A stretch of DNA of 64,000 nt. Source: Pocillopora damicornis. Taxonomy: Eukaryota. Shown piece after piece: positions 239-36,391 of this stretch (within the stretch, counting starts at the first letter, position 1; each line of letters opens with the position of its first letter). The stretch lies in the NCBI RefSeq assembly GCF_003704095.1, contig NW_020844410.1, positions 62,001 to 126,000 of the forward strand. The letters run 5' to 3'. The notes beneath the pieces are model-generated. The model had not been told where the DNA came from. It did not search any database and saw only the letters and a list, made by a program, of their open reading frames with translations. Made by a program: the position numbers and the translations under genes.

Positions 239-520
239 CTGTTGAATCGCGCGTGTCTGTCGCTGAAGGATTAATCCTCGTCTTTCGAGCTGGTTTTCGA
301 AATATGTTCTTTGAGTCGTCAGTTTAAGAGCGGCAGCCGCAGATTGTTCACTTGCTTCTTCATCTTCTTCACAAGTTTCAAACACCAACACGTAATCAAT
401 TCTTCGCCTCGGCTCACTACTGCTCAAATAAACTCCTTCGTTATCATCCGTGATAAAATTTTCTGAAACAGTTTCATACTCTTCTTCGTCCAAAAGTCTT
501 GATAATTGTGTTTTACTCAT
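239..520 (-). CDS. ANO: Anoctamin/TMEM16 paralog A0, first coding exon (rest of gene lies beyond the left edge of the window)
   Basis: 94 codons MSKTQLSRLL...GVYLSSSEPRRRIDYVLVFE...FENQLERRGLILQ, the anoctamin N-terminal motif. It ends at a phase-0 donor CAG|GTAAG at 239/238, the same position as in the other paralogs. Confidence 0.85.
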
Positions 521-1312
521 GTTCGGCTTGTTGAAAGCAAACTGAACTCAAGTAGCACTTCGTGACTCGAAAAGTGTTCAAAACCACTAAATCACTTCCC
601 CTTGAGGCACTATACTATTCTTTGAAAACAATGCTACGTGCCTTACTCGGTATTTCTGGAGTTCACTCGAGGACAAAGTCTACTCAAATGAGCATAACAA
701 TGCAACTGCAGGACTTACTTACGCATTTTGATAAGAAAACCTGAACTAAATTAAAAACATTGGTAAAATCTTCACAGGGGCTTCCGAATTTTCTAACGCT
801 GTCAATTCAAGATCGAGAACGACGCTTTTTAACTAATATGTTTAATTGGAGGCGCTTCTCTTCGGCAACGGTATCTAATTTAAATTCACTGTACTTGCTA
901 GTCATTAATTAGATTTTTTTCTCAAAAGAGTCAACCTCCATCATGAACGGAGTTGAACGAACCGGCTTCTTTTATTTCCCAGCACGTTATAAATAGCTGC
1001 TAACGAAAAGGAGCTTGTGTTTTGGGTTACGTCCCACAAGCGAGAGCCTTAGCCAGTGAATTAATACAAAATTAAAGTCCTAATATATTTGCCTTCCTAA
1101 ATTTCTTTATTTAAAACAATATAAATTCAGCTATAGAGCTAAGCACTAGCTGAAATGAAACTGTGAAAATGAAGCACAGACATATTTTAAGCTCCCTATC
1201 TTCCACTCGCCCAAGCAGAAATCTGGGTGATTAAGGCAATTCTAAAATTTGTGGTGATGTTTTATTCCGTCGAGCTTATCTTGGTCAGTAAATATCAAAT
1301 CAAAGCTCCTGC

Positions 1313-4576: not shown

Positions 4577-7500
4577 TTAAGACTCGTATGTTTGATCAAA
4601 TTTTTTGCTTTCAACGTTGATTTCATCCAGGGCATCCTCATACTGTGTTACGTTATCATCCTCTTCTTCCTTAAGTTCCTCGATGTCACTGTCGTATTCA
4701 GGAGTATAGAACACTGTCTTGACCATTTCTCTTTCTCTTTCCATAATAAACTGCAGCTCATCAGGCTTGTCAGGCACCAACCAAGCAATAAATCCTGTCA
4801 CAGTGTAAACTACAAACTGAAATACGAACACGAAGGCCAACCGAGCAGTTAGGAGGTGCCAGTATGCTTTGGAGAAGCCATACGGGTAAGTGCTATCATG
4901 GTATCCAGGGTATCTATTCACAGAGGAAACAGAACATGAAACGAATGCTTTTTTTTGTGTGTATGGCAAATACTGTAGGGTAAACATCTGCCCCAAGACT
5001 ATTGTACCTCTTGAGGAGCGCAAGGAAGCTGAAAACAGCAATTAATCTAGGTTAGATCGGTCATTTCTAGGACAGATTTCATTTCAGAAAGACAGCAGCT
5101 CCAAATGAAGCTACCCTAAGTTACCATGAACCTCCCAACACTCTAAACACTCTATTGCTATTGCGATGAAAGCTATTTAACTACCTGCAATGACTTCTTG
5201 TGTAGTTTAGATTTTCTGTCGGGTTGTCTGGCTGGGTTCCATTTTCCCATGAGTAGAGGGTATCCAAATCAATGGCAGCTAGTGTAAAATTAACGTATCC
5301 CTTCAGAGTGCCTCCATATGAGGAATGACGATCAGGAGCGTACATGACTTTGTAAAGGAGTTTCGGGATAAACTCTGAAGTGAACGCGAGTATGAACGCA
5401 TTCACCAGCACTGAAGCTCTTGTCACAGCTTCCAGGACGTCGTACCAGGCCCCTATGTCCTCAACACGGGCGACATCCGGTCGGCGAAAGTGGCACAAGA
5501 ACTTGATAGCGTCCAGACGGATCTCAATGACGGTGTTAATAAAGGCAAACAACGGGCCGAGTGGGAACGCAGCCACAAACATGGTCACAAAGCCATACTG
5601 TAAAACTGAAATTAGTCAAGAATGATTCAATTCTGAGATTGCCACCCTTTGCCTCAGTGAGCATACAATCTAGATGTATCAGCAGAGGCGAAAATGCATT
5701 TTATAGACTAGTTCTATGTTATCTTGAGATAACAGGGCTTCGTACAGAAGCGGCTACATGAGGTCTCCACCAAGTAGCTGTAAATGGGGAAAAAAATTTC
5801 TGAAAGGGATCTTTAGACTGTAACAGTAAAGTTGGTGTCGATATTGGCGAATCACGATGCGCAAGTTTACCAATTAAACGAGAGAAAGACCGAATATTAT
5901 ATTCAAATACACATCGATTTATTATGCAATATATATATATATTTATTATCATCGTTATTATGACTATGATCATCATCATCATCATTATTATTATTATTAT
6001 TATTCTCATGATTTGAATTTTTCAATGTTCCATTTGAGTTACAAATTTGCTCCACTTGCTTAGCAATCATGAACTTGGCCTTACAACGGCTTTTGAAAAT
6101 TCAGTTGAGTTGAAAAGATATCAATTTCCACAATATTTAAAATTCTTACCAATTTCTAAGTACTCCCAGAACATGTAATGCTTTTCACATGCAGTTAGAT
6201 CGTAGTCGCTTTCGTACTGACGACAGTCATCTGGATTCTCTTTGTTACGCCGATTCTTCAACAGACTCAAATATCTAAAACCAAATGAGAGCATGCGCAC
6301 TTAGAATAGGCTGTTAGGTTTGAAACTGTGCTAACGAAAGAAATAAACAAATTCCGAAAAGATTCAAGCTCTCTAAAAGAACGTCCTTGGTACTTACGGC
6401 ATCGCCATTTCAAATATATTGAAGAAAATCTGCTTTCCCACCATGATTATAAAAAGTTGAACAGCAAGTTCCAAAAAGCATCCCTGCTCGCTGCAGCCGT
6501 CTAATCGATACTTGCTCATCAGCCTCCTGTATTTTCCAGGAGATCCCACAATAAGGTTTGATTTAAAGAAAGCAATATAAAATAGGGCTGAATAGTTATT
6601 GACGAACTGGAAAGAAGACATTTTCCATGTGAAACTGTCCTTGTAAGCGCTTTCTGTGGGTGGGTTTTCCCAGTCAGTGAGCCAAATTGCCAGCTTCTCG
6701 TACACTTTGGACAAAAACATTATAAAAACAAGATTGATAAGCGCAGCCGTTGCCGCCGTGATGATACGAGCGCGTTTTTGAACATTGTTGTCCCTGCTAC
6801 CACTCAGTACAGCAAACATGGCGGCACGGTATACCACTACGCCAACTGCAGCTCCGAGAACTAGAAGAATCATGAAAGCTACCACGGCAAAGACTGTGCC
6901 ATATCTTCGGTACGTCTTAACCTTGGAAACTACAGGTTCTATTTTTCCGGTCTCTGGGTTACGTTTAAAGAGAAACATTTGCAACTGTTCTTTTGGTAAA
7001 CTTTTCCTGTATTCAGGACGAAATTGTTCTTCTTCTTCCTCAAACTCAGAGGTGTGCCATTCTTGAGCGAGGGATGCTTGGCGACGTTTCCAAAACTCAA
7101 GGAATAGCGTGGCCCAGATGGCCACAACAAAAGCAAGGAACACAGTTCCATCGTTGTCAAGCAGATGCGTTGTGTAAGCATACATGCAGACGTCGGGAGC
7201 TAGATTCCAAAAGCTGCACTGTTTGTCACACAATGGACACATATACCAACGACCTCTGTTTTTCTCGTCGCAAAGATCTTGAACAGGGATGTAGGAGCCT
7301 GCTGAGATAACACCAGCGATGAATACCAGCAAGCCAACAATAGCAAGAGGAAACAACATGGCGGTGTAAAATCCGAGCCAGGCAAAATAGAGGCCGACTT
7401 CGTGTCCGAAGTAATCCTTGATGGCATCATAAGGTTGATGCTTGAAGAATCTGCCAAATCTTGCCCAGTCTGCTTTCAGCTTCTGTCGATCATTTGTTGC

Positions 7501-8792
7501 AGTTTCTCCTTTTTCCTGCGAATCTGGGCCATCATGAAGTGAATACCCAGCGAGGTAAGCCTGATCCAGAAGAAGCCTCTGTAGCCCCACCCCGTCCGGT
7601 CCTCTCGCAAACCGGGCATTTTGAAGCAAGTGTTGGACGATGTAGTGGCGATCCAAGACGTTGAAAAAGCTCTCTTTGTCCTCGTTGTTCACATACTCGC
7701 TCAAGTAATCTTCTAAAAAGGGAGCCATGTAAAAGCTCGGCTTTTCGCCCAGGGTGGAATCATGAAGGACAAAAGGATTTTTGCTTTGCAGCTTTTCGAA
7801 CAATTTGTGACCAATTATATTCTCTATCCATGAAGAAAATACCGCGTCATTGGGTCGAAGAGGAACCTTTAATCTCATCCGTTCAGCACTCTGTGCCAAC
7901 ACATTCCAAGGCGCATGGATCAGCACAAAATGACGTTCTATTTCTGGATCCTGCATAGTGCATGAAAAGTAAATTCAAAATTTTACATGAACATTGATGA
8001 TATAAACAAGAGCTAATCGAATTTAAACTGGAAAAGGAGAGAATGTGCGGCTGTATTATAAAACATTTCATCGCTGTCCCTTCCCCCAACAGTCTCCTCT
8101 ATCAGCAACGTAATTCACCCAGGCGGTTACTTTTCATGTAGCTAGCTTAAGTAGTTCCTACTCTTAGCGTGTCGATGCGATGGTACTTTTACCGCAAAGC
8201 TTTACAGGGTAAATATTTTTCTTCAAGGCTTTAGTGAGTACTTGCAACCATTACCCTGCAATTAATATTGAGATTCTCCTATTCGTTTGAGTTTATAAAT
8301 CAGATTAAAGAATGTTAAAAGATCGATAAAATTCTAGGCGGTTATTGTTAGCTATGAAAACTTGGAGAATGAAAATTTACTGAAAAGCCCTGCGAATAAT
8401 GCAAATTAAAACATGGCCCTATAAGCCTCTAAATAAATATTGAATGTGATAAAATGAAATAGCAATAATAGAATTTCTAATCTATAATTATTTACCTCCC
8501 CGATGATCACAGTCTTACGCTGCAGATCTAACCCTAGTTTATTTTCAAGGCATTTTTCAAATGAATATCGCCATGCGAGAAGTTTCCTTTGTTTTGCGAG
8601 AGCATCATCATCCATTCCACTGACATCCTTTGGAGTTTCGTAAACCAAAACGTAATCAACATGCTTTTCGTAGGTTTTATTTCTCTTGTGTAGTTCGCTT
8701 GGATCGTCTTCAAGGGATACTTGCGATTTTTCATTCAACTCTATCTGGATGTTATCGATTCGGTCCAATCTCGCATAGGATCCCCTTTCCAT
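4577..8792 (-). CDS. ANO: Anoctamin/TMEM16 paralog A1 (Ca2+-activated channel/scramblase family), 5 exons, ~910 aa
   Basis: Exons 8792-8496, 7950-6398, 6274-6150, 5605-5185, 4913-4577, all GT-AG and phase-consistent (2733 nt). Motifs: [104 protein letters not shown]. Confidence 0.93.
5926..6005. repeat. Compound microsatellite (AT)n/(ATC)n/(ATT)n
   Basis: Visible directly; it accounts for the spurious ORF 5719-6009. Confidence 0.85.
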
Positions 8793-11121: not shown

Positions 11122-14100
11122 TTACAGCATCTCATTATCCGGGGGTACGTGATGGTCACCATTGCTTTCATCAATATCATACTTCTTTCTAAACGCCAAC
11201 TTCGTCAAATGCTGTTCTCGTTTGGCCTTCAAATCCAGATCCTTTGGAACATCAGGTACCATGTAGGCGATGAAACTTGTGATGAGGTACACAGAGAACT
11301 GGAACACAAACACGAAAGCGAGGCGCGCAGCTATCACGTGCCAGTATTGCTTGTTCTGTTTGTAAGGTGGAGTCGATGCAAAATAGCCATGATATCTAAG
11401 ACAGAAATAAAGAATCACTTAAGTCGTAGATAGGCAATGTGATGTAATATCTGGAAGAACTTGAAAACCCGTTCTCAAACTCATTAAGACACGCCAATTT
11501 CGTCACGTGCATTCCGGTGAAACACCGAAACGACGTGCTGTCTTTGAGTTTCATATAATATCAAACCCTTGAGTTTAATAAAGCATCAAACCCTTGATTT
11601 TGATAAAGCATCAAACTCTAGTGAACTCATTTCTTAATATGAATATTAATAACGCGTATTTGAATACTTAAAACAAAGACACCAACATGAACAAACAACC
11701 TTGTGATAACATTATTCACAGACAAATCACCATAACAATACAATTTTTCGTAACAACAAACTTGCCGACAACATGTTCGTGAATATGTCCATTTTCTTTT
11801 TTTCCTGAGGCACAATTAAGAAGCTATATCAAAAAAATCGTGCATCGGATTTCACCAGGGTTCCCAAACACTCGAAAACAATAAAAGCATCATCAGTTTC
11901 ATCAGTTTTCTCGTGTTTGGAAACCCTGATGAAATCCTCGCACTCGTTTTTGAAATAGTACGTCGATGATTCACCCAGGCTAGAACCCAGTCCTCTTACA
12001 GTAACCACAAGAACACAACATGTCACGTCGAGTTTTGCATAAAATGATAAAAAGATACGTTTGCATTATATAAGAAAAAATGGGACCCCCTCGATATCAT
12101 TCATAAAAACAACAGCAATCGAAAAAAAAAAGAAAAAAAAAAAAAAGGAAATTAGGAAATTAAAACAACGTAGTTACCTGCAACTGCTATTATGATAACG
12201 AAGATTTTCATAAATATTTTCTGGTTCTGTTCCAGGTTCTTGCTCGAACAGGTAGGAGACATCAATAGACGCCAAAGAGTTCTCTATGTATCCATCCAAC
12301 GTACCTCCTCCTGTAGAGTTGCGGTCTGGAGCATACTTCATTTTGTAAAGAAGCTTTGGGATGTACTCTGATGTAAAGGCCAGCACAAAGGCATTTACCA
12401 GGACTGAAATTTTTGTCACACCCTCAAGGATTCGGAACCAGGCTCCGATATCTTCAGCACGTGCAGCGTCTGGCCTCCTAAACTGCGATACAAAGTTGAT
12501 GGCGTCTACACGGATTTCAGCTATAGCAGTAAGGAGGGCAAAGAAAGGACCAAGAGGGAATGCAGCCACGAACATGGTCACAAATCCATACTGTAAAACT
12601 GCAAGTCGAATAACATGTATATATTAGACGGTATATAGAACGAGCGTTACGTGTCCGAGCATGGGCATCTTTTCAATGTGTTCGCTGAGAGAAAAAAAGA
12701 TATCGTAATTTTGATGACGCTCACCTGTTCTTCCCTTTTAGTCACTGTTGATCTAGGATTGATTTCGATCAAAGCACCACGCAGTTTATAGAGTTACACA
12801 ATTTGGACTAATAAATAATTTAAATATATCGCCTAATTTTTGTTTGTAAGAGGTTTTCAAGAAATGTTGAATTACGTAAGGTCTTTAGAAAACAATCCAA
12901 ATTGCGATATATTGTAGAACGGCGGATGAAGCTTCTAATGTGAAATTGTCACTGAATCACAAAAATATTACAGCTTACCAACTTCGAGATACTCCCAAAA
13001 CATGTAGTGGTCTCCTTGAGGACTCAGATCAAAGTCAAGCTGGTACTGTGGTTGGTCTTTGTCAGTTTCTTTGCGCCTCTTCAACCAGTACATGACATAT
13101 CTGTGAAGAAATTACGATAACTTATCTCTAAGCATTGCAATTGAAAGCTGCTGGTAAGCAAGGCAAAAAACTAAGTCAAAGTAATTGTAAAATCAAGAGA
13201 ATATGTGAAGCTGATAACACAAAATTACCTATACTGGCAGAGTGCAGTAACGTTTTCCAATTGAAAAAGATACCCAAATTCTTACATTTTTCAAGATTGT
13301 TGTGAGACATAACTCTAACTCTTCAAGAACACAGTTTTAGATGTGATATCGTATTCTCAGGTCGTTGAGAGAGAGGTTACTCATTTATTGGGTGTTTTTT
13401 AGCGACCTATTTTGTTACTTACGGTATAACAACTTCAGTGACGTTGCCAATAATCTGCTGCCCGACCATGATGATGAGAAGCTGGACACAAAGCTCTAAG
13501 AAGCATCCTTGTTCGCTGCAGCCATCCAATCGGAATCGACCGCCTATGCGCTTGTACCTGCCAGGGGTTCCAACCACCAGCCCTGACTTGAAAAAGGCGA
13601 TGTAAAAGATTGAAGCATATGTATTCACAAATTGGAATAAGTACATTTTCCAAGTAAAGCTGTCTTCGTAGTCGGTGCGCGTAGGTGGGTTCTCCCAGTC
13701 AGTCAACCAGACGGCCAATTTGCTGTAAGCGAACTTCAAGAGGTTGATTGCGAGAAGATTGAGGAGAGCTGCAGTTGCTGAGGTAATAATCCTGGCACGT
13801 GTTTGGATTTTTTTGTCTTTGTTTCCACTTAAGGAAGCAAAAACTGCAGCTCGATAAACGACTACACCAACCACAGCAGCGATGACGAGGAAAATCATGA
13901 AGATAATAATGCTGAAAACCCCACCATACCGCCTATATAGAGTTAACTTGGGTACGTACGGTTCCATCTTTCCAGTGGCTTCATTTTTCTTGAGGGTAGT
14001 TACGGTTGAAGAGTACTCAGGACGAAGAGGTTCCTCTTCTTCTTCAAAGTCATCTGTGTGCCACTCTTGAGCAAGACTAGCCTGCCGACGCTTCCAGAAC

Positions 14101-16098
14101 TCAAGGAACAACGTCGCCCAGACAGACGCGATGAGAGCTAAGCCCACTGTCCAATCATTGTCAAAGAAATGTGTGACGTAGGCATAGAGGCAGGTGGACG
14201 AAGCTAGATCCCAGTAGCTACACTGCCTGTCGCACAATGGGCACATATACCATTTGTTTTGGTTTCCCTTATCGCAGACATCTTTGACTGGAATGTGAGA
14301 GCCCGCGGAGACAATTCCATACAGAAACACAACAAGACCAACGATGGCGAGAGGTACTAACATTGCCGTGTAAAATCCAAGCCAAGAAAAGTACAGGGCG
14401 ATTTCACTGCCAAAGTAATCCTTGATTGCTCCATACGGCTGGAATTTATAAAACCTTCCAAATCTGGCCCAGTCTCGATGCAATCGCTGTCGATCATTTG
14501 AAGGCTCCTCATCGGATTCAAGAGCAACGGGACCATCATGAAGTGGGTATCCTGCCACATATGCACCTTCATAAATCATTCTTCTGAGCCCAACACCATG
14601 TCGACCTTCTGCAAAGCGAGCATTGAAGCAAATTTGCTGCACAATGTATATGCGGTCAATGTTGTCGAAGAACTCCGCCTTGTTGTGGTGATTGACAAAC
14701 TTTGTAACTTCAGCTTCCTTGAAGTTAGCCATGAAGAAGCTGCTTTTTTCTTCCAAAGTAGAATCCTGCACAATCAAGGGATTTCTCCGACGCAGTGACT
14801 GCATTCTTTCGCTTCCGATTGTCTTCTCCATCCATGATTTGAACACAATGTCGTTTTCTTGAAATGGAACTTTGAGACGCATCGCCTCCGCTTTTTTAGC
14901 CAATACGGGCCACGGAGCATGAATAAGGACAAAGTGTCGCTTGACTTCAGGATCCTGGTAGAAAAAACATACATAAGATTTAATTTAAAGAAGTTTCGAT
15001 CAACAGATGCTACGTTCAGAAACGTAACAAAGCTCTTTTCAATAAATCGCTCGCTTTTAAACTAGTCTGTGGATAAAAGATTTTTGCCTGCCCTAAATCA
15101 ACCTAGGTCCAAGCGTATTTGATAGAAGTTAAATTTGTTCAATTTATTGGCTAACTCTATATTTAATTTTTGGACGATTTTAATAACACACGAACACATG
15201 TTTGTTTGAACGCTTACTGGTAGTATTCAGTATATAAATTTTAAAAAGGTGGGCGAGATTTATCTCAATAAGGCAATAATTGAGAGTCATATGATATTTG
15301 AAGATGATGGCAGTTGTATATTGTTACGTAATTAACTGCTCAGTTTTCCATAACTCGTGATCGTGCCCCTTCAATGAAGATGGAAGGAAACTTTCAACAA
15401 GTAGCAAGAGTTTTTTTAACTTTCCTAACTTCCTTTTGATAAAATTGAGTAATTTTAGCATTTCGTGAAGCACATTTTACGCCCTTATTAGCCTCTACCC
15501 TTATAGGTTTCGAGTCTGGCATTAACTGAACTTGCTCCGAAGGGTTTATGGGAAAGACAATGAAATATTAGCATTAGATCAATGATATTATTGTGTGAAG
15601 CTTGACAATATTGATCATTACGATAAAGCGTGCAGTTATGTTTTTTTTCTCAAGGTGATTTCAAGCAACACATATCATTGAAAAGCATCAAGCTTTTCCA
15701 TTCATTATCTGCGTGTTCAAGAAAAGCAAAAAGGAGAATTAGCAATTAATGATGAATTACAGAGCTCGGCAAACTATGAGAACAACAACCAGCGAGGGTA
15801 GCCCCACCTGTGCAGAGACGATCTCATCGTATTCTATGTTAAGCCCTTCTTTCCTTAAGCAATCTTCAAAAGCTTTCCGTTGATATTGCTTACTGTCATT
15901 TGAATTAGCTTGCTCCTTTTGATTTGTTTCATAAACTAACACGTAGTCGATGCGCTTTGCTGGCTGTGCATCGTCGCTGAAATATACTCCTTTCGGCAAT
16001 CTTCGATCTGATTCCTCCCTTAATTCTAGCTGTGTATTGTCATTTTTATCCTCTTCATCTTGGCTTAATCTGAAATAGCCATTTAATCCATTTTTCAT
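11122..16098 (-). CDS. ANO: Anoctamin/TMEM16 paralog A2, 5 exons, ~879 aa
   Basis: Exons 16098-15808, 14954-13423, 13100-12979, 12598-12178, 11395-11122 (2640 nt, phase-consistent). Same intron positions as A1. Motifs [57 protein letters not shown]. Confidence 0.93.
11826..11958. repeat. Long imperfect hairpin (probable transposon end) in the last intron of paralog A2
   Basis: Arms 11847-11871 and 11913-11937 are 23/25 complementary. Confidence 0.6.
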
Positions 16099-18139: not shown

Positions 18140-18436
18140 CTGAGATGATATACACTCTGACCGTTCTAGGATTAACCCAGCGTTTGCAAGACTTTCTTCA
18201 TATGCCCTCCTCATTTCCTCACGTTTATTGGCTTCTTCCTTGGCTTCTTCATCGTTATTTTCTTTCTCCTCGCAACGCTCGTATACAAGGACGTAGTCGA
18301 TTTTCTTTCTCGATCCTGCGTCGTCCAAATACAATCCCTTCGTCTCTGTCTGTTTGGAGTGGAAAGATGGCTCCACCATATTAAGAAGAATGTCACCATC
18401 TTCGGTGGTTTTCGTGTAGGCGACAGGTTTCGCCAT
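18140..18436 (-). CDS. ANO: Extra anoctamin first coding exon with no gene body of its own; probable alternative first exon of paralog A2
   Basis: ATG at 18436, 99 open codons MAKPVAYTKT...[21 protein letters not shown]...YEESLANAGLILE...SSQ, phase-0 donor CAG|GTTAGT at 18140/18139. I find no anoctamin body exons between 16098 and 18140. Confidence 0.8.
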
Positions 18437-19829: not shown

Positions 19830-19862
19830 TTTACAGAAGAGTCAAACTATTGTCCCAAGCTT

Positions 19863-20729: not shown

Positions 20730-20762
20730 GTACCAAGAATGTTTGTATCAACCAGTTAGACC

Positions 20763-22022: not shown

Positions 22023-25000
22023 CTAAGCAACTGCTTCAGTGTTTACATCGACCTCTTCGGTCTCTTTTTCTCGAAGGGCTTCCTTGGCCAGGAATTCTTC
22101 CCGTTTGATTTTCAGCGCCAGCAACTTTGGCTGATCAGGAACCAACCAGGCCAAAAACTTTCTGATTGAATAAACGATGTATTGGAACACAAATACAAAC
22201 GCCAGCTTCGCAGCAATCACATGCCAGTGCTGTTTAGTGTAGGCATAAGGATATGCACGCTCGTTATAACCGGGATACCTGCATTATCATCAAAGGGGGA
22301 AAAGTTAAATCGAACAATTTTTACTTTGCTAAAAAGAAAAAACATTCTAACGTCATAAAAAATATATCTATTAACAAAACGACTAGGACATTTTCTGAAA
22401 ATGTTCTTCCATGCAACTCATTCAAGCCGGTACTTTTTAACGCCTCACGTACAGTTAAGCTATCCGCGACTTATTCAGCTCCACGTATCCACCTCCCAAG
22501 TAAAAGACACAACCAATGGCGTCATTTTCGATTAGGTGTCGAAAGTGATCAGAGATTGCTCTGGTTCTACTTTACTTTTCTCTGTGATTGGTCCGGAAAA
22601 CTCGCACCACTTTCCCAACCAATCAGATGCAATCCTAAAACCAATAAAAGCTTAGTGACGCGCGTTTTCCCGCGCTTTAAGCAGTTTGCTTGTTTTTACT
22701 TCGAGTCCTAATTGGTTCTTACTAAAACTTATTTTTTCTTCCTTCTTATCAGCTTTTTTCTCGTAAAAGCGCTCTAATACACTCGAAACTATCATCACTC
22801 ATTGTAAAGCTGCATGTTGACTTACCTACAGTAGTCGCTGGTATAATTCAGCACTTGATATGCGTATTTATATCCTGGCTCTCCACTCAAATTGTACTTT
22901 TTGTAGTCAGATATATTGAAGTACGCCAAACGACTTTCCACGAAACCCGCCAAAGTTCCGTCGCTGTAGGAGTACATGTACACGAGCCTCGGTATGAAGT
23001 CTGACGTAAACGCTATGACAAACGCATTCACCAAAACTGACACATTTGCTAAACCTTCCATAATTGGGTACCAGGCTCCGATATCTTGAGCGCGTGTGGC
23101 GATGGGTCGGCGGAATTGACAGACATAGTTGACAGCGTCTACGCGCACTTCTACAGCACTGTTAAGCAAAGCAAACAGTGGTGCAAGAGGAAAGGCAGCT
23201 ACAAACATCGTCACGAATCCGAATTGTAACACTGAAAAAATAAAGATAAGGGCCGGTGGGAATACGGCGAAATGTAATCACTCGCTGTAATGAAACTACT
23301 ACGTACAAATTAATGCAAAAAAAAAAAAAAAATCAGTACTGCTTGGGTGATATTCCTGACACCGTATCTTTTTAAAATAAAAGAAATACACTCAGCCTCT
23401 AACATGTAGTACATTTCCTTCCCACCAAAGTTGCACCCTCTCTTTCTGGACAAAAAAAAGGAACAAAAACGCTTTTTCTCTATTGTTTAAGCTGCCAAAT
23501 CAACGCTCCGCCAAATACTTTCTGCTCATAAAAATAGATTACACTTGAAGTAAATACACGGCCAATGAGTACACTCTTTGCATAAAAACCCGCAGTACAA
23601 TCATTTACTCAAAGTCTTAATTTATAGGAACTGTAAGCCCCCCCTATTTGAACAATTTAGTCGTATGTTGAAAAATAATCAACCTTATCTCTCACTATTC
23701 CAATGCAATATAACGAGAAGAGAGTATTACCAACTTCCAAGTATTCCCAAAACAAACTGTGTTCTGGTAACGGGCTCAGTTTGTAATCTTCTTCCCACTG
23801 AGGGATGTCATCGGTTTCTTTCCTTGCTTGCCGCAGTTTCCACCATTTCATCAAGCCACTAAAGAAAAGTTAAAATATTTGAAGCTATATAAAGGTTGGT
23901 TTGTCTGAGGTAATCGTGATTTAGCTATTTCTTCCTTTCGTGACGTGCACATCATTACCCCACCCCACCCCTCTAGTTACAAAGGAGTTCAAGAATTCTG
24001 CGGTATACTCACGGGATGGCAGTTTCCGTAATGTTTCCAATAATCTGTTGCCCGACCATGATGATCGCCAGCTGTATACACAAGTCGAGGAGGCAACCTG
24101 CAGCGCCACACCCATCTAAGCGTCCACTACCTCCCAGTCGCCGGTAGTTGCCCGGTGTGCCAACTACAAGGTTCAACTTAAAGAAAGCGATGTAGAAGAT
24201 CGAGGAATAAGTGTTCACGAACTGGAATAGGAACATCTTGTAGGTGAAGCTGTCTTTGTAGTCAGTCGCTGTTCGCGGATTCTCCCAATTGGTGAGCCAT
24301 ATTGCCAGTTTCTCGTAGAAGAATTTCAACAAATTGATGAAAACCTAAATCGAATGAAAAAAATCGTAATGATGACTTGAACTAAAGAATGTCGATTCCT
24401 GTGGCTAATCATTCACAAACTTTTCATATCAGTATTGCTCTCCTTTGAAAACTCTGGTTTTGCATTGGGAAGTCATGACAAATGTTCGAGACAGCTGTAG
24501 GTTGCCCTTACTTCAGATATTTTTCCATAACTTGATAAAAGATTTGCTCAACTGACCGAAAAATAACTAAATGTGCGTGATCGCGTATTTTTTCTGCATT
24601 TCACCCAGTGGTTCCCTCTGAAATGACTACATCGCAATCCAGAATAATGAGAAGGAGGGGGGGGGGAAGAAAGAAGGTTAAGCTAAAGTTCAATAAGACT
24701 CACCAAATTAAGTAAGGCTGCTGTAACACTTGTAATAATCTTGGCATTTCTCCGCACATTGCTTTCTTCGCTGCGCACTAAAGCTGCAAACACCGAGGCC
24801 CTGTAGGCTACCACTCCGATGACCGCCGCTACTACCAGGAAAATCATGAACGAGATTGCGCTTCCAACTCCAGCAAACCTTTGGTATTTCGTCATGTTTG
24901 GGACATGAGGTACAACCTTTCCGGTGACAGGATCTTCCCGCCAAGTTGGGGCAGTGGCCACAAACTCTGGACGGAACTGTTCCTCGACGTCTTCAAAATG

Positions 25001-28000
25001 CATCATGTGCCAGCGGTAGGCAAGAACAGCTTGACGTCGCTTCCAAAATTCCAGGAATACCGTCGCCCACACAGACATGAAAATAGCGAAGATAACCGTG
25101 CTGTCGTTATCGAATGCATGGGCTGCGATGTAGTAATAACAGCTTGAGACCAGAGACCAGTAGGGGCATTGATCGTCACACAGGGAACACATGTAGAATT
25201 TACGTTCGTTGGATTTGTTGCAAATATCTTTTACGGGTTGAAAGTCGCGTGCGTTAATGAAACCGTACAAGAAAACGAAGAGCCCAAAAAGAGCGGCAGG
25301 AATAAGCATGACTGTGTAAAATCCCAGCCAGGAGAAGTACAGGCCAATTTCGGTACCAAAATAATCCTTGATGGCGTCATAAGGCTGAAACTTGAACCAA
25401 CGTCCGAACCGCGCCCAGTCACGCCTCAAGCGCTGCCTATCGTTCGTGGGGGGTTCCCCCTCAGAACATTCTTCGGGACCAGGATGGAGAGGGTACGATG
25501 CAGTGAAGTTTCCTTCATGAATCATTTTTTTAATTCCAACATCATACTTTTCTTCACCAAACTGAATATGACTACAGACGTTCTCTACCATTCGACTCCT
25601 GTCCGTTCGGCTGAAGAAAGTGTCTTTGTTCTTATGGCCGACATAAATTTCTAAGCGATCGCTCTTGAAGTAACCCATAAAAAAATTCCTTGACTTGGTG
25701 ATGGTGCCATCGTGGATCTCGAAGGGATTAGTACGATCAATCATATCGCGGATGTTTTCTCCTACGTTTTTCTCGTACCAGCCTTTCGTTGTAATATCAC
25801 TTTCCTGAAACAAACAGAACGAAAATAGATCGAAAAATGTAAATACCTACATATTCAAACAAACTAATGGAGAGGGTAAAATGAAAAATACTTTAAGTGC
25901 GAGAAAATGTACGACAAACAACAGAAAAATCGAGAAATACGAATCACAAATCTATGACATCGATTACCTTTATGGGCATTTTCATCATCATCTCTTCTGC
26001 GGTCTTGATTAAAAGTTCCCATGGAGCGTGAACTTTCAAAAAGTGTGTCTTGGTTTTGTCTTCCTATAAATTGAAGTGTGGTAATGAGTACCTCGACTGT
26101 TAAGCGATCATGACTGAGAAATTTAATAAATATTATTACCGCAATTGTAGCATAAGGAGCCGAAATGTTTTCGGTCATTTTCCGTCAATACTTAGGCATG
26201 AGGATCCAAAAAAAAAAGGACACACAAAAGAGCAACCGGTCAACAGGAAGAGCTAGTGCAGATCTTAAATTCTGAGCACTAAAGAAACCTAGCACCACGA
26301 GAAAATAATGTGCAAGCAAATGTTATAAAAACAGAACTGACAAGTACCAACTGAGAAGGGGTTGGTCAGTGACACTTTCGTCCAAATTGATGTTTATTTG
26401 AACTTCAGTGCTCTTACAACGTGTGCGTGACATGTGCTACCTGATGTTACGAACAGTGCGTCTGATCACAGCTAGTGTCCCATGTTCTGTTGCTAACAGA
26501 GTCTACGAATGACCATTCTTAAATTCCTAAATGGATGCCGTGTTTTCAGCCTTCTCTATCTCAATTACCACCCTACATTTTAGTGTGCGTTTGTGCCTAT
26601 TTTCAAATATGTTCGAAACATCTCTCAAATTCAGATCGAAACAACACTGAATCACAGTTTTAGAAAAGACTTAGCTGCCCTATTAGACGTCCTCCTAAAT
26701 CTTCAGCTTGTGAAACAGTAAAAATGCAAATTGCCTTTTGTATCGCGGTGACATCGCGGGCGTTTTTTACTTGTTCTTTCCAATTTTTCTCACAATCCAC
26801 GTATATTTTTGATAAAAATATATTTAGTTTTAATTCACGAGCTACAGAACTAAATAAGACGCTTAAAAGTAAATTTCTTTAGGCAAATATTGTGTTTTTC
26901 TGACACACGTAATAAAAGTTGCAAGGCGCACGTGTTGATCCAACGTTATTCATAATGTGACTTAGACGTGACAAATGTGTGAAGATTACGTGACAAGTTA
27001 AGATATGTAAATATTTTCACGTCGTGGGCTACAAGGGTGAAAAGTTGTAGATAACCTTACGATCTTTGGGTCATCGTTCGAAACTTCTCGTAAGAAAAGA
27101 GAGATACACCTTTAAACGATCTGCAGAAAAGCGCATTCTAGACGTCGCGAGACAAAAATATTGTTGTCTGTGTAACGGGAAGCAAACACCAGACGTTGTC
27201 TAGTTAAGAACAAAAGAACACGAGCCACAACGATTACAAAAATAAATAGATTTACCCTGACAAGTTCCATGAGTGAAATTTCATTCTCTACATATTTTAT
27301 ACTCAAAATGAGGAGCAGGGCAATCAAAAACCCTATTTTAGTCATTATTTTGAGTGCAAAGGCAATTCCTTAGGTTTTTAGCACCTTGGTTTACTTAGAA
27401 TATTCAAATTTTATACAACATACGATAACAAATATCGCAAAGAGAATTTTGTCGTATGAAATTGTTTTAGTATAGATACACTACAACAAAGCTTAATTTC
27501 CCAAAAAACATTTGAGTGCTCCTTTATCTTACTTTCGGCCATATGTTCATCTATATTTCGATAAAAGTAAAACTGTTTTCTTTCCTTGTTTTATTGAATT
27601 GAGCACACCCGATTAAATTTGCATCGAATCTTACACCAATACATAAACATGGAGATTAGTTACTTTCTTACCTTTGTAGTAACCTCTTCTTCGTACTCAA
27701 TTTCAAGCCCAGCTTGCTTTAAATTTCGCTGAAATCTCTCTCTTTTCTCCGCTTTTTCACCCAGTTTTTCCTTCTCCTTCTCGTCTAACTCATCTTCGTT
27801 CGAAGGCGTCTCGTAAGCGATGACATAGTCAATCAGCCGCTTGCCATCGCGAAAGCGCAGCCGTTCTTTCTCCCTCTTTTCGACTTCGATGTGTTCCAAC
27901 TCTATCTCGAGCGTCTGCTCCTCCATCATTTGATGTTTTGATAAAACTGCTTCTTCGTCCAAAAGTGGTGTTTGATCGGCGAACGACTCTTCGCGACCTG

Positions 28001-28061
28001 TACCAGGACTTTCGTTGGCTGGAACGCGAGAGCGCAGCCCGCTCGCACTTGGGTGTGCCAT
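22023..28061 (-). CDS. ANO: Anoctamin/TMEM16 paralog A3, 7 exons, ~902 aa
   Basis: Exons 28061-27672, 26063-25968 ([18 protein letters not shown]..., not in the ORF track), 25804-24704, 24344-24013, 23858-23731, 23231-22826, 22278-22023 (2709 nt, phase-consistent). Motifs [50 protein letters not shown]. Confidence 0.93.
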
Positions 28062-30141: not shown

Positions 30142-33100
30142 TCATACTCTATTGATGCCAAGTCGGCTTCCATTAGCAACACTACTAGACTTTCTCGATC
30201 TGTTTACATTCTCGCAAGACATGTAAAGAGAATCTGTAGAACCTTCAGTGTGCGACACACGTGCGTCCAGGTCACGTGACGCTTCAGCCTCACTTCGAGT
30301 TAAGCATTGCTTAGCGACGTAACTCTCGCGCATTATCTTCACTTCAAGTTTGCGGGGGATATCGGGAATGAGCCAATCCAAGAGACTAACGATGAAGAAA
30401 ACGAAGTATTGGAAGATAATGACGAAAGCTAAACGGACAGCGAGAACGAAGAAATACTGACGGTTGAAATCGTACGGCTCTTGTGGGTCAAAGTACTCCT
30501 TGTACCTAGTGAAACAAATATCAGCTCAGTAAGTTTGGCCAACAATTATGCAGTTAAATGACAAAGGAATTTGTAAAGTTCTAAGATTACCTGCAATAGG
30601 TTTTGTTGTAAGGTAAGTTTTTGAAAGGATCCCGAGGTAGGGACAGCTCACTGAAGTCTTTAATGTTGAAGTAAGACAAGCTATTGTTGACATAACCAGT
30701 TAAACTTCCATCGGAGCTGTATGCGTATTTGTACACTTCCCTAAAAAATAAGTAAAACGTAAATAAAAATTAATTATAGAACACTTGATCTCAAAACACT
30801 GCCACTCCTGGTCAGAAGACTTCGGGGCGGTATGATAGGTTTCAATGAATTATAGAACACTTGATCTCAAAACACTGCCACTCCTGGTCAGAAGACTTCG
30901 GGGCGGTATGATAGGTTTCAAAGGCCAAAACTTAAATATTGTTATCCTATTTATGATCATACTTTCAAACCTATGTTTATTATTTATTTAATAATTTATA
31001 AATTATTAAATGAATTATAAAATTTATAATTATTATAATTTAACCTAACAGTTATGCAAAAAGATGATTTGGTTTGATCAACCGCCGGAATTGATCATGT
31101 AAATTGGCCACCGTAAAGAGTTTCAAAGCTGCCGTTTCGAGCGTCAGCCCTTCGTCAGAGTGAATGGTACAGTGCAGTTGACTTTACAAAAGGCGGCCAG
31201 AAAAATATCTGCTTCTGTTAGCGAGGAGTTAGTCTATCACCTCAGGGCTTCTCTCCTACTTCCCCACCCCCTCCTCTACCGGGATGAAGGCAAAGTTCTC
31301 CCCCTCTCTACCTTCCCCGATATCTTTTATTCTGTGCAAGCCCCAGCTACACAAGTTTATCCTGAAAGTGACAAGGCACAGTGTAGCCTCATTTTCAAGC
31401 GACAATGCTCAACCGAACTTGTACATCACATTTGACACTCCTGAAGCATGAAACATAGTTTATGTTAGCACACATACCTCGGAATGAATTCTGACGTAAA
31501 CGCGATCACAAAAGAGTTCACCACTACGGCAAACCAGCTCATGGTGCGGAGAATTCCGAACCAGACACCAATCCCTTGAGCCCGCTCTGCTACTGGTCGG
31601 CGGAAGTTAACGACGAAATTAATGGCATCTATGCGAAGTTCCAGGATATTGTTGATGAGTGCAAACAAAGGTGCCAGGGGAAATGCAGCCACGAACATGG
31701 TAACAAAACCAAACTGGATTACTGGACATAAAATGAAACGAAAGCTTGGTTAGCTCGAGCCTGGCCCTCAGATAGTGGAGACGAGAGAAAGAGCAGGCGC
31801 GAGAAAATGGCAAGCAAGCAGGCGCTGCTCTTGTGGTCGCAAAGAATCGGTACTTTCCTACACGCTCTAGCTCGTTACGCGAAATAAATTTTTCGCGCCC
31901 CTGCCTTTCCGTTGGTTTCCGCTGATGGAGGACCTAGAATTCGCTAAAGATGAACCACCTATATCAAAATTCACCACAAAACTACTTCTTTTAATTCCCA
32001 GATTAAAAAGAGAAACCTGAAAATTACATTTACCTGTTACGGCAATTAGCATACACGTGAATTTGCGTCATTTTGGCGGGAAAATCCTAGTCTTTGCTAT
32101 TTTACCTTGACGATCTTACAATGAGGAACTTTTTACAAGCCCATTGATGAGGTTCTTTTTTATCATTAATAGGTACACAATGAAGACAACATCAATATAT
32201 CAACAACACACAGCCATCAACATGAGACTTCAAACCAAGTAAAGACCAAACATTACCCATGTCGTGATATTCGTAGAACATTCTCAACTCCGGTTCACCA
32301 TTAATTAGATAATCTATCTCCCACTGCTCAGGATGTACATTTGATTCATTTTCCTTACGCCCGTACCACCAACGCACGAAAGATCTGAAAAAAAGAAACA
32401 AAAAAACCATTCTTTAAAACAAATGAACGAACTTACGAATGAAAGAACGAAGCAAAGAGCGGGCAGTTGTGTAACAATCCAAAGAAATTTCGAACAGGCG
32501 AGCAAATTAACGAACTAAAGGAGTAAGTTAGAAGATATGGTGACAGAATGCAATACATCCTGTCAGCCACGAGGGAAAGGTATCATAAGTAACTAAGTAC
32601 GAGTGGTTTCTTCTCTTCAAGTGTGCTCACAAAAATAAATCAATTTGACCACCCTTTCAACTCTCCCCCCTCCCCCTGTGTGGATTAGTCGACCAAGCCA
32701 AAGTTCTGACGCTGTTTTTAATAAGTTGGACAACTCCGTTCAAAGAACCTTGCCATCCAGCGGATAAATGCACAAAAGAGACAAACGCGTCCATCAGATA
32801 AGCGTTATCGTCCTTTTGAACACCTGGGGCCTGATATAGACATTTTAGTTCTGATTCCCATTTCTCAGTTCCAACTTAATTCAAGTTACTATGAAAAAAA
32901 AGAAAAAGAAAAACAAACGAGTAAAATACTAACGGCAAAGCAAACTTGGAAATGGAATTGATGAACTGCTTGCCAACCATGATAACAGCTAACTGAATGC
33001 ACAACTCAATAAAACATCCCGATGGGTCGCATCCTTCCATTCTTCCACCGCCGATTCGATTATAATTCCCAGGATATCCCACGATACGACTGCTTTTGAA

Positions 33101-36100
33101 GAACGCAATGTAAAACAGCGACGAGTACATGTTTACAAACTGGAAAGAAAATAGCTTCAGTGTTAAAATATTTTGATACTCTGTTCTGGTCCGGGGGGAC
33201 TCCCACTCGGTTAGCGCGACCGCTATTTTCTCATACACAACTCCCAGCACAGTAATAGCGACAAGATTCAGAACAGAAGCTGTCAAAGAGGTTATAATTC
33301 GCGCGCCCTTCTGTATGTCCTCGTCCGGGAAGGCGGACAAAACAGCGACCATAGCTGCTCTGTAAATGACAACTCCAACCAAAGTAGCAATCACGAGTAA
33401 AACCATGAACGAAACTATTAAAAAACCACATGTGAATTTCCCCGCCCGCAACGAAAACGGAATGTAGGGCTCCAATTTGCCTGTCACAGGGTTGGTTCGC
33501 TTGTTTTTGGCCTTTGTAACAAAAGCTGGCCTAGGTGGTTCGAATTGTTCTTCAAAATGCAACATGTCCCATTCGTGAGCTAAGCCTATTTCACGTCTTC
33601 GCCACATCTCCAGAAACACGGTTGCCCAGAGAGACATAAAAACCGCGAAGAACACCGTTCCTTCGTGGTCAAACAGATGTGATACTGTAGCGTAATCACA
33701 GCTTTTTGTTAGGGTCCAGTAACTGCAATCGTTGTCACAAAGCGGACACATGTAAAACAACTCGGAGTTTCTCTCATCGCAGATCTCCTTAACTGGTTGA
33801 AATGTTTCCATTGTTATAAGACCAGCGACGAAGCAGCATACGCCGACTAAACCAGCAATAACAAGCATGAAATTGTACGTTCCTAGCCAGGCAAAATACA
33901 ATGCTACACGAGTCCCAAAGTAATTCTTTATCGCATTAAGGGGCTGATACTTGTACCACTGACTAAAAGATGCCCAGTTTTGACATAATCGCTGACGTTC
34001 GTTTGTCGGAAGATTATCTTCGCTCTCTGTCCGAAGATCTTCATGCAAGGGATATGCACATTCGTAGACCCCTTTATGCAGCAGACGAGAGATTCCGAAG
34101 TCGTCCATTTCAGACGAATACTTCGTCGAGAGTAGAAAGCGATGGGTCATGCGGCTTCGGTCAATGTCGGAAAAAAACGTTTCCTTGTCTTCGATAAGGA
34201 AACAGTCTGACTTTGCCCGACTAAAAACCGCCGTTACCTGACGATCAGGTTTCATGAGAGAACGATCTTGAAGTTGGAAAATATTAAGAACATTTTTGGC
34301 CTTTTGAAGCCATTTACTCTTTTTCGAAGACTTGAGGTGTATTAGCCTTTCAGGCTCGCGAACAGGAACCCGAATCATCATTTCCTCTGCGCACTTGGCC
34401 AGAGCGTCCCAGGGAGCGTGGACAAGAACAAAGGTGAGGTTTTCCTACGATGGAAAAAAAAATAAGTAAATAAAAATTCATTTTCAGGGATTAGAACTGT
34501 CATGTCTATTTAGTCCAAAGGATTTCAATTCATTACAGAAATAAATCTACTTTCAGAAAAGATTAAATTACAAATGTTATATCTACAGATCCAGGCCCAG
34601 CTGTACAAAGGGCGGATAACGCTATCCAACTGATAAATCGCTATCCAGCGGATAAGTGATGGCAAACCGTAGAGCGTTATCCACCAGATAAAGATTTATT
34701 CTGTGAATAGCGTTATCCGACCTTCGAACAACCGGGGCCTGGATGTTGCAGTGAACCTGTCAAATTAAGGCCGAAAGTATAATTGCCAACATACCACTCA
34801 AACGATTCCTTAGGTATTGTATTTTCAAACCTGTTTGTTAGATGTTACGTGTTCTATCATCAAGCCTTGCTTTTTCAGATTCTTCTCATATTTTTCTCTC
34901 ATTTCCGCTTTTTCTCTTTCTTCCTCTTCATTTCTCTTCTCCAACTCAGGTTCAGAATAAACTAACACGTAATCAATTTTCTGCGTGGAAAACAAATAAA
35001 ATTTAATCAAATCAAATTAGTTGTGATTGTTATTGGATTGCTGCTCACTACCTAAGAAGGCTCGGATAAAATTGCAAGGAACCACGTTAGACAAAAATCA
35101 TTATGAGATCTTATACCAAGATGGCCGAAGCCTCCTTTAACTTAAAGAAACTCATATACTACAAAGCTTGCTTTCTGTTATTTTCATTTGAAAACTAAAT
35201 TTACTGCATCAACTTGTGGAGACCTTGAATGTAAACATCTTTCCTGCAGCTTACACGAAAGGAGAAAGATGTCAGTTGTTTAGGTTTACAATATGATTTT
35301 TAAAACAATGCTGAATATGGATTTTACTTCTGACAAATGTTTCCTACTGCTGTCTTGTATCACATCATGCACTAACACAACAAACATTAAATCAAGTAGA
35401 GTCCCACCTTATTCAACAATTCACGTTTACTTATCGATCCCGATAGACTTTGATCGCCCATATCTTGTAAAAGTATTTCCTCCATTGTCGAAGGATTTTT
35501 ACCGGTAGCGATGCGCTCAAGGTTTATTTCCGAAGTGCTTATCGCTGCGACGTAGCTATCGCGTTTCTGCGATGCTTGACTCCAACGAATTGGGGCAGGA
35601 CTTTGTCGCGGTTTGTCAGACGTACTTGGCAATTCATACGCGGTGGAAGATGCAAGAGTCGTTTCATAAATGTCTCCGACGTTTTCTGCGGTTGCTATGC
35701 GTGAAATCGGATCTCTGAAAATGAAATGGGATAGTTTAATTTAGTGATGAGTAGTGTTCCAATTACTTGTAAAAACAACGCATAATCATATCAACAATAG
35801 CGGTCTGAACACAAAATCGTTTCGTAAGTAAAACCCAGGTGGATAAATAAGTATGGTGGTATAACAGGTGGCAAACCACTGTGGCTTTCCTCTCGAAATT
35901 TGCAAATACGTCTTTGTGATTTGCTTGTTTACTAGCGTAATCAAGTGACAATAATAAAAGAAAAGACATTTTCTAAACGTTAAGTGTTAATTCTTAAAAG
36001 GAGGTCCACCTATCAAGAAAAAAAAAAAACCGTCGTAATGCTTTCAGGCTGGTACCAAATTTTGCGGGTTTTTTTAACACGCCTTTCTTTTCAATGTAGG

Positions 36101-36391
36101 AGGTTGTGGTGCCTCGGAGTTTAATAACGAGTGAAAAAAATTTAAGCAAACTATACAAACTTAAAATTTTATCAAAAATAGTGATAAGATAATTTTTTGC
36201 ACCGTTTCTCACCAAATTTTCACCGTTTAGACCATTCGACTTCGATAACATATTGCTATATCCATATACAGCGTCATCAAATTTAAAGCCATTAAGAAAT
36301 GCGCGTTCTGTAGTTAATGTTAACCTGATTAAACGGACGCTATAAAATAAACTCACCTTCCTACCAGACAAAATACTCGTGATTTGTTCAT
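30142..36391 (-). CDS. ANO: Anoctamin/TMEM16 paralog A4, ~8 exons, ~962 aa, with a long Ser/Thr-rich N-terminus and a divergent Ca2+ site
   Basis: Exons 36391-36357 ([13 protein letters not shown]|GTGAG), 35714-35408, 34980-34831 (KIDYVLVY), 34444-32934, 32384-32257, 31721-31478, 30740-30591, 30505-30142 (2889 nt, phase-consistent). The two 5'-most exons rest on frame and splice compatibility only, so they are less certain. Confidence 0.88.
30772..30921. repeat. Exact tandem duplication of a 74-bp unit (period 76) in an intron of paralog A4
   Basis: aattatagaacacttgatctc...gtatgataggtttcaa occurs at 30772-30845 and 30848-30921. Confidence 0.9.
31065..31165 (-). mobile_element. Penelope-type retroelement end fragment carrying a minimal hammerhead ribozyme motif (mutated)
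   Basis: Minus strand reads ctCTGACGAaGGGCtgacGCTCGAAAcggcagct, i.e. CUGANGA-stemII-GAAA. The expected GUC cleavage triplet is GGC here. Confidence 0.55.
34591..34742. mobile_element. Palindromic ~150-bp MITE (CCAGGCCC...GGGCCTGG) with internal GGATAA/TTATCC repeats
   Basis: Terminal inverted repeats are visible directly. Partial relative at ~32740-32833 and a related-ended element at ~48131-48342. Confidence 0.65.

What the first reader, a model, noticed from the sequence alone, without database searches (positions are those of the whole stretch)
239..36391. Head-to-tail array of at least five intact, strongly diverged anoctamin/TMEM16 paralogs
Seen: four full genes with intact frames and splice phases, plus the start of a fifth, all on the minus strand within 36 kb, and the array continues off the window. 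The copies are well diverged in protein sequence, so this is an old maintained expansion, not a haplotig duplication. Established: TMEM16 proteins are Ca2+-activated anion channels or lipid scramblases, and in vertebrates they are mostly dispersed genes. Inference: a lineage-specific channel/scramblase repertoire. If the host is a coral it could serve Cl-/HCO3- movement, calcification, mucus or nematocyte secretion, or symbiont-compartment membranes.
Basis: partly seen in the sequence, partly recalled or inferred. Interest (0 to 1): 0.8.

Follow-up and report, generated by a model that had tools for sequence, protein, structure and literature searches.

The report
Six-gene coral anoctamin (TMEM16N) array
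A stony coral (Pocillopora damicornis) carries six intact, diverged anoctamin membrane-protein genes in a row, but they belong to a cnidarian-only subfamily already known for tandem copies, and half of the array is shared with sea anemones.

Summary
Window 239-36391 carries four complete minus-strand anoctamin genes and the first exon of a fifth. With 10 kb upstream, the array is six head-to-tail genes in about 46 kb (5'->3': D, C, B, A, E, F). All have GT-AG introns, conserved phases and no internal stops, and are 41-59% identical. Three of my models match RefSeq proteins of Pocillopora damicornis exactly. Gene A is spliced as predicted in four polyA RNA runs, and F matches full-length transcript ORFs.

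The "lineage-specific" reading is only partly right. All six fall in the cnidarian clade that holds the Nematostella genes a 2022 preprint named TMEM16N/ANO13. That preprint already reported linked copies in Nematostella, Hydra and Actinia, but sampled no stony coral. D, C and B each have a Nematostella counterpart, and the anemone C- and B-type genes lie in the same order. Only A, E and F look like a stony-coral addition, shared across coral families; that dating is favoured but not proven (AU p = 0.097).

Five genes keep the calcium ligands. D carries a Lys at one ligand in all 22 hexacoral D sequences. Nothing here ties the array to calcification.

Verdict: a real array, already annotated, and a new member of a known kind.

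The parts
30142..36391 (-). Gene D (TMEM16N, D type), 8 coding exons: 36391-36356, 35716-35408, 34983-34831, 34444-32934, 32384-32257, 31721-31478, 30740-30591, 30505-30142. The calcium site is altered: in TM6 Asn->Ser and Glu->Lys, and in TM7 EYLE->EYHD.
   Evidence: Pfam. Splice model. 100% identical to residues 141-962 of RefSeq XP_027038323.1. 5' exons mapped. Motifs.
22023..28061 (-). Gene C (902 aa model), 7 exons: 28061-27672, 26063-25968, 25804-24704, 24344-24013, 23858-23731, 23231-22826, 22278-22023. The large exon is split by two extra introns. It groups with Nematostella 'anoctamin-3'.
   Evidence: Tree (clade support 99).
11122..18436 (-). Gene B (881 aa). There are two alternative first exons, 18436-18140 (distal, used by RefSeq) and 16098-15808 (proximal). 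Then come 14954-13423, 13100-12979, 12598-12178 and 11395-11122.
   Evidence: The model with the distal exon is 100% identical to RefSeq XP_027038292.1 over 881 aa.
4577..8792 (-). Gene A (910 aa model), 5 exons: 8792-8496, 7950-6398, 6274-6150, 5605-5185, 4913-4577.
   Evidence: All four introns are removed at exactly these sites in contigs of four polyA RNA runs from three studies.
239..520 (-). First coding exon of gene E (871 aa). The rest lies upstream of the window at G000:C1045:58153-61660. Gene F (909 aa) follows at G000:C1045:52045-56670.
   Evidence: The E model is 100% identical to RefSeq XP_027038266.1. The F model is 99.2-99.7% identical to Logan-derived ORFs P0197, P0195 and P0015.
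37654..40136 (+). Pentatricopeptide-repeat (PTCD1-like) gene, divergent from gene D. The same neighbour sits beside the Nematostella D-type gene.
   Evidence: Pfam PPR_2/PPR_3. Nematostella neighbour. tblastn 33% over 271 aa, E 1.8e-40.

Best explanation
This is a conserved tandem array of six TMEM16N (ANO13-type, cnidarian-only) anoctamin genes in Pocillopora damicornis.

It was built in layers. The D type split off first and is found across Anthozoa. The C and B types split before stony corals and sea anemones diverged. The B type then most likely gave rise to A, E and F in the stony-coral stem, before the complex and robust coral lineages separated. Gene order and strand have been kept since.

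The proteins are most likely calcium-gated TMEM16 dimers. Calcium binding to acidic residues on TM6-TM8 opens a membrane-exposed groove. Five copies keep every calcium ligand. Their pore-lining TM5 carries the TMEM16F-type Gln, so scrambling with a non-selective conductance is more likely than a TMEM16A-like chloride channel.

D has a fixed Lys at one calcium ligand and probably has changed calcium gating.

Shown: gene structure, intactness, orthology groups, synteny, transcription and splicing of A and F. Inferred: dimer, calcium gating, substrate.
For: Structure and intactness. Three models equal RefSeq proteins.

Expression: spliced contigs for all four A introns in four polyA runs from three studies. 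Full-length ORFs from short Logan contigs match F at 99.2-99.7%. Variants in the A coding sequence are 11 synonymous to 6 non-synonymous.

Phylogeny (IQ-TREE LG+C20, SH-aLRT; FastTree gives the same topology): cnidarian clade 99, D 99, C 99, stony-coral B 99, A 99, E 100, F 99, A+E+F 100.

Synteny: Nematostella chromosome OW051996.1 has C-type, B-type and B-type genes head-to-tail at 14.62-14.65 Mb, and PPR<->D-type at 11.87 Mb. A coral relative (ENA ERZ25071802 contig) keeps the order A -> E -> F, with B upstream on the same strand.

Subfamily: the Nematostella genes in my clade sit at the coordinates the preprint gives for TMEM16N.

Residues: calcium ligands and TM5 Gln.
Against: No functional data exist for any TMEM16N protein. 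By sequence the large exons are about equally close to mouse ANO1 and ANO6: B scores 381 vs 337 bits, D scores 371 vs 379. At the TMEM16F Tyr563 gate position the coral genes have Thr, Asn or Met, closer to the Ser of TMEM16A.

The post-anemone date for A/E/F is not secure. Forcing coral B with anemone B-types costs 16.2 lnL, but AU p = 0.097.

Direct RNA evidence was obtained only for A and F. For B, D and E it rests on RefSeq models, and for C on orthologous ORFs from short Logan contigs in other corals.
Confidence: 0.8

Rival explanations
1. The array is a coral-specific expansion that supplies anion (Cl-/HCO3-) channels for calcification or symbiosis.
For: A, E and F form a clade (support 100) with only stony-coral or unnamed coral-like members, and no Nematostella, Exaiptasia or Actinostola sequence. 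Six linked copies exceed the 3-5 genes per species reported for other cnidarians.
Against: Three of the six types predate stony corals and occur in non-calcifying anemones. All six carry Gln where TMEM16A has its TM5 Lys. The literature search found no link between anoctamins and coral calcification. No cell-type expression data were examined.
Confidence: 0.12
2. All six types already existed in the hexacoral ancestor, and sea anemones lost A/E/F. The array would then be wholly ancient, with no coral-stem duplication.
For: The AU test does not reject a tree in which coral B and anemone B-types form a clade that excludes A/E/F (p = 0.097). The support values that place anemone B-types outside coral B + A/E/F are moderate (81 and 89).
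Against: The best tree is 16.2 lnL better and puts A/E/F sister to coral B. Searches with A and D as queries returned no anemone sequence closer to A/E/F than to B. A basal hexacoral contig (ERZ25073755) has a single B-type gene next to a D-type gene.
Confidence: 0.2
3. Some copies, especially A or D, are decaying or unexpressed duplicates whose frames are only intact by chance.
For: A has the longest end branch among the six (0.22). No full-length A-clade ORF appeared among the database hits. D has lost two canonical calcium ligands.
Against: A is spliced at all four predicted junctions in four polyA runs, and its variants are mostly synonymous. D's substitutions are fixed in all 22 hexacoral D sequences, including Nematostella and Actinostola, and the large-exon ORF is intact in each of them. 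That pattern is conservation, not decay.
Confidence: 0.03

Closest known systems
TMEM16N (ANO13), the Cnidaria-specific anoctamin subfamily (Yuan, Zhu and Kadowaki, bioRxiv 10.1101/2022.04.22.489151)
   Same: All six coral genes sit in one clade with Nematostella LOC5520273, LOC5520274 and LOC5520189, the preprint's linked TMEM16N trio. I identified these by matching coordinates on DS469516.1 / NW_001834404.1. Both have Anoct_dimer plus Anoctamin domains, and both occur as tandem duplicates.
   Different: The preprint sampled no stony coral and reports 3-5 genes per species with two or three linked. Here six are linked, three of them (A/E/F) without an anemone counterpart. The preprint states that the calcium ligands are conserved in its representative. 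The hexacoral D type departs from that.
Mouse TMEM16F / ANO6 (calcium-activated scramblase and non-selective channel; PDB 6P46, 6QP6)
   Same: 337-379 bits over the large exon. The TM5 motif FQFVN, with the Gln that aligns to the Gln of mouse ANO6, is present in five copies; E has FQFFN. Calcium ligands are kept in five of six.
   Different: Not an orthologue: the preprint treats TMEM16C-F as vertebrate-specific. The position aligned to the TMEM16F gate Tyr is Thr, Asn or Met. No scrambling assay exists.
Mouse TMEM16A / ANO1 (calcium-activated chloride channel; PDB 5OYB, 6BGI)
   Same: 363-381 bits over the large exon for A and B, slightly better than ANO6. The overall architecture is the same, and the TM6 Asn/Glu ligands are kept in A, B, C, E and F.
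   Different: The TM5 Lys of ANO1 (LKFVN) is Gln in all six coral genes. The genes are not in the TMEM16A/B clade described for cnidarians in the preprint.

Membership tests
TMEM16 / anoctamin superfamily | Pfam Anoctamin domain (PF04547) covered from start to end | tested here: met
   In A, B, C and D the large exon hits profile positions 1-173/282. The downstream exons hit positions 334-412 and 408/414-460. All scores are above the curated cut-off.
TMEM16 / anoctamin superfamily | N-terminal cytosolic Anoct_dimer domain (PF16178) | tested here: met
   E 1e-29 to 3e-37 in the four large exons. The first exon of E hits profile positions 6-52.
TMEM16 / anoctamin superfamily | Calcium-binding Asn/Glu (TM6), Glu/Glu (TM7) and Glu/Asp (TM8) | tested here: met
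   Kept in A, B, C and E. F has a conservative Asp at the first TM7 Glu. Not met in D: TM6 has Ser and Lys, and TM7 has EYHD. Residue roles come from my knowledge of the mouse TMEM16A structures.
TMEM16 / anoctamin superfamily | Homodimer with ten transmembrane helices per subunit | not tested
   The large exon aligns end to end with mouse ANO1 and ANO6 chains. No structure or complex was predicted, and two full chains exceed the size limit of the complex tool.
TMEM16N (ANO13) subfamily | Falls in the cnidarian-only clade that holds Nematostella LOC5520273/LOC5520274/LOC5520189 | tested here: met
   The cnidarian clade has support 99 against bilaterian ANO3/4-like and ANO7-like outgroups. Each coral gene is nested with those Nematostella proteins or their sisters. 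Locus identity was checked by coordinates. Caveats: ANO1/2 and ANO5/6 were not in the outgroup, and the preprint's membership of the D type could not be checked.
TMEM16A/B chloride-channel subfamily | Orthology to ANO1/2, and the TM5 Lys linked to anion selectivity | tested here: not met
   All six have Gln at the position aligned to the ANO1 Lys. The preprint lists a separate cnidarian TMEM16A/B clade. The genome has about eight further anoctamin loci that could hold it.

The most novel reading that the evidence does not exclude
The array may record functional diversification that no study has addressed. First, a stony-coral-stem triplication (A/E/F) may have added calcium-gated scramblase or channel isoforms for a coral-specific cell type. 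Second, the hexacoral D type has kept a Lys in place of a calcium-coordinating Glu in every hexacoral D sequence sampled. It may be a TMEM16 protein whose gate is pre-neutralised and works with lower or no calcium dependence.
Probability: 0.2. Interest if true: 0.6.

Novelty: new member of a known kind. Interest (0 to 1): 0.3.

Why it matters
The finding extends a cnidarian-only anoctamin subfamily to stony corals and shows its largest linked set so far, six genes.

It dates the layers of duplication. It also shows that gene order has been kept since before stony corals and sea anemones diverged.

It gives a clean set of natural paralogs for asking how TMEM16 proteins switch between channel and scramblase behaviour and how calcium gating can be rewired: five with a canonical calcium site and one with a fixed Lys.

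It does not yet say anything about calcification or symbiosis.

Tried and rejected
1. Haplotig or recent duplication: rejected, because the copies are only 41-59% identical.

2. Pseudogenes: rejected, because there are no internal stops. A is spliced in RNA, and each type has intact orthologues in other corals.

3. First model of D skipping the small TM7 exon: the BLAST seed missed it. Reading the three frames found the exon at 32384-32257, and the model was corrected.

4. D's first exon at ORF 35994-36494: no anoctamin similarity. The true 5' exons were placed with the RefSeq protein.

5. Names taken from 90% clusters were misleading. The cluster of the F product held the RefSeq product of E. 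The cluster of A's exon held the RefSeq products of D and B. Assignments were redone by alignment.

6. Look-ups of gene neighbourhoods for Montipora (P0027, P0080) and for Nematostella isoforms X2 (P0091, P0136) found no record. The Nematostella loci were reached through other isoforms.

7. PH-domain (SKAP-like) neighbour as shared synteny with Nematostella: both species have a PH-domain gene upstream on the array's strand. tblastn and tblastx found no significant similarity, so orthology is not claimed.

8. Channel versus scramblase from PDB scores: the scores are too close to decide.

9. Literature searches for anoctamins in coral calcification found nothing relevant.

10. All database searches used single exons by reference or proteins returned by the tools. 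Joined models were built only inside scripts, for three purposes: to check frames, to compare with returned proteins, and to cut the tree rows. For C, the tree row joins three exons.
Full report
**What is in the sequence**

The window is G000:C1045:62001-126000 of a 234-Mb assembly. That contig is 495,591 bases long. The same length is recorded for the contig that carries three RefSeq anoctamin proteins of Pocillopora damicornis.

Four large minus-strand open exons carry Pfam Anoct_dimer followed by Anoctamin, with E-values from 1e-29 to 1e-90. They lie at 6394-7956, 13419-14903, 24683-25813 and 32876-34381. A short exon at 206-520 carries the start of Anoct_dimer. tblastn with full-length cnidarian homologues found places the remaining exons.

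A search of the whole genome found two more large exons just upstream of the window. After fetching that DNA the array proved to be six genes, with nothing further in the next 30 kb. On the minus strand, 5' to 3', I call them D, C, B, A, E and F.

**Intactness**

I refined every junction by requiring GT/GC-AG, frame continuity, no stops and the best fit to a reference protein. All chosen junctions are GT-AG. The four shared introns have phases 0, 2, 1 and 2 in all six genes. C has two extra introns inside the large exon, and D has one extra intron downstream.

The models are 871-910 aa, plus 962 aa for D, and have no internal stop. The small TM7 exon of D was missed by BLAST and found by reading the frames.

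Three models proved identical to RefSeq proteins that I had not used to build them. E equals XP_027038266.1. B with its distal first exon equals XP_027038292.1. D equals residues 141-962 of XP_027038323.1. The last also supplied D's two 5' exons, with the ATG at 36391.

The downstream exons of the four in-window genes carry the Anoctamin profile to its last position. The copies are 41-59% identical to each other.

All database searches were made exon by exon by reference, or with proteins that the tools returned. Joined models were built only inside scripts, to check frames, to compare with returned proteins, and to cut the tree rows (for C, a join of three exons).

**Expression**

PolyA RNA runs hold 36-56% of the sampled words of the 6-kb stretch around gene A, about what the mature mRNA would give. 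Contigs from four such runs, from three studies, skip exactly the four predicted A introns: 4913|5185, 5605|6150, 6274|6398 and 7949|8495, each with CT..AC ends on the plus strand. Seventeen listed variants inside the A coding sequence are 11 synonymous and 6 non-synonymous, which fits purifying selection.

ORFs of 896-909 aa on Logan contigs of 3.4-3.8 kb match F at 99.2-99.7% over the whole spliced length. For B, D and E the evidence is the RefSeq models. For C it is full-length ORFs on short Logan contigs from other corals, in the same clade.

**How old the copies are**

I cut about 180 homologues from two protein searches to the large-exon region. FastTree on all of them, and IQ-TREE (LG+C20, SH-aLRT) on 71, gave the same picture.

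- All cnidarian sequences form one clade (99) against bilaterian ANO3/4-like and ANO7-like outgroups.
- D (99) contains an octocoral branch and a hexacoral branch, the latter with Nematostella and Actinostola.
- C (99) contains Nematostella 'anoctamin-3', Montipora and Acropora.
- The rest (99) contains anemone B-type genes (Nematostella twice, Exaiptasia). It also holds a stony-coral B clade (99) and A+E+F (100), with A (99), E (100) and F (99) each distinct.
- F holds both complex corals (Montipora, Porites) and robust corals (Desmophyllum, Pocillopora).

So D, C and B predate the split between corals and anemones. A, E and F most likely arose in the stony-coral stem. This last point is not secure. 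Forcing coral B and anemone B-types together costs 16.2 log-likelihood units, but the AU test gives p = 0.097.

**Synteny**

On Nematostella chromosome OW051996.1 a C-type gene is followed head-to-tail by a B-type gene at 14.62-14.65 Mb. On the older scaffold a second B-type gene follows on the same strand. The order C then B is the coral's.

The Nematostella D-type gene lies 2.75 Mb away on the same chromosome, divergent from a PPR gene. The coral D gene has the same divergent PPR neighbour at 37.6-40.1 kb, and the two PPR genes are homologous (E 1.8e-40). A PH-domain gene lies upstream of the array in both species, but I found no sequence similarity, so I do not claim orthology.

In an unnamed coral relative (ENA ERZ25071802) the order A, E, F is kept head-to-tail, with B upstream on the same strand. 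An unnamed basal hexacoral contig has one B-type gene and a convergent D-type gene.

**What is already known**

Preprint 10.1101/2022.04.22.489151 defines TMEM16N (ANO13) as a cnidarian-only subfamily with 3-5 genes per species. It lists three linked Nematostella genes whose coordinates are those of my loci L015 and L016. It also lists linked pairs in Hydra and Actinia. It sampled no stony coral. From AlphaFold models it inferred a wide, scramblase-like inner gate for one Actinia TMEM16N protein.

Studies in Hydra and Xenia link 'ANO1-like' genes and the inhibitor Ani9 to pacemaker activity, without resolving which subfamily is involved. I found no paper tying anoctamins to coral calcification.

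**How it probably works**

By homology these are calcium-gated TMEM16 proteins. A, B, C, E and F keep the TM6 Asn/Glu, TM7 Glu(Asp)/Glu and TM8 Glu/Asp ligands.

D has Ser and Lys in TM6 and EYHD in TM7. The Lys is present in all 22 hexacoral D sequences, while octocoral D-type sequences keep Glu. Of the 145 other sequences, 138 have Glu there. That is a fixed functional change, not decay.

All six have Gln at the TM5 position where mouse ANO6 has Gln and mouse ANO1 has Lys. The position aligned to the ANO6 gate Tyr is a small polar residue or Met. PDB scores do not separate ANO1 from ANO6.

I therefore favour a scramblase with a non-selective conductance over a pure chloride channel. This is inference only.

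**Context and verdict**

The genome has about eight more anoctamin loci on other contigs. Only this array matched the A exon strongly, so it appears to be the whole TMEM16N complement of this assembly.

The array is real, intact and expressed. It is already annotated in RefSeq and belongs to a described subfamily known for tandem copies. Three things are new: its size in stony corals, the dating of its layers, and the conserved microsynteny. I rate it a new member of a known kind, of modest interest.

Noticed in passing
window 8800-9999 and beyond: RNA contigs run unspliced from A's first exon upstream through 9999 and about 660 bases further (X1 record 3). Contig depth is also higher there. 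This could be a long A 5' UTR. It could equally be B's 3' UTR (B's stop is at 11122) abutting or overlapping A's start. Contigs cannot tell these apart.
   Followed up: no
window 15808-18436: B has two homologous first exons, at 18436-18140 and 16098-15808. Each has its own ATG and a phase-0 GT donor that fits the same acceptor at 14954. RefSeq XP_027038292.1 uses the distal one. I did not check RNA use of the proximal one.
   Followed up: partly
L015:10001-27867 and L015:1-3287 (Nematostella) versus window large exons: The ~1.5-kb exon is single in A, B, D, E and F, and occurs as one ~490-520 aa ORF in many cnidarian contigs. In Nematostella it is split into about seven exons in one B-type gene and at least two in the other. 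This is intron gain in Nematostella or repeated loss elsewhere.
   Followed up: no
G000:C2777:130-156 kb; C1708:143-153 kb; C472:500-504 kb; C3895:264-268 kb; C37:170-172 kb; C1732:78-82 kb: About eight further anoctamin loci lie in the same genome. Two are possible linked pairs, on C2777 and C1708.
   Followed up: no
L019:391-6480 (coral relative, ENA ERZ25071802): ORFs with PIF1/AAA_30 helicase and Herpes_teg_N hits lie just upstream of the relative's B-type gene. This suggests a transposon (Helitron-like) insertion, and the array there is spread over more DNA.
   Followed up: no
Assembly gaps are at 40711-41016, 49170-49530, 56120-56447 and 62875-62974.
   Followed up: partly
clusters: The 90% clusters of the protein collection mix paralogs. 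The RefSeq product of E sits in the cluster of F. The RefSeq products of D and B sit in the cluster of A's exon. A name taken from cluster membership therefore needs checking by alignment.
   Followed up: yes
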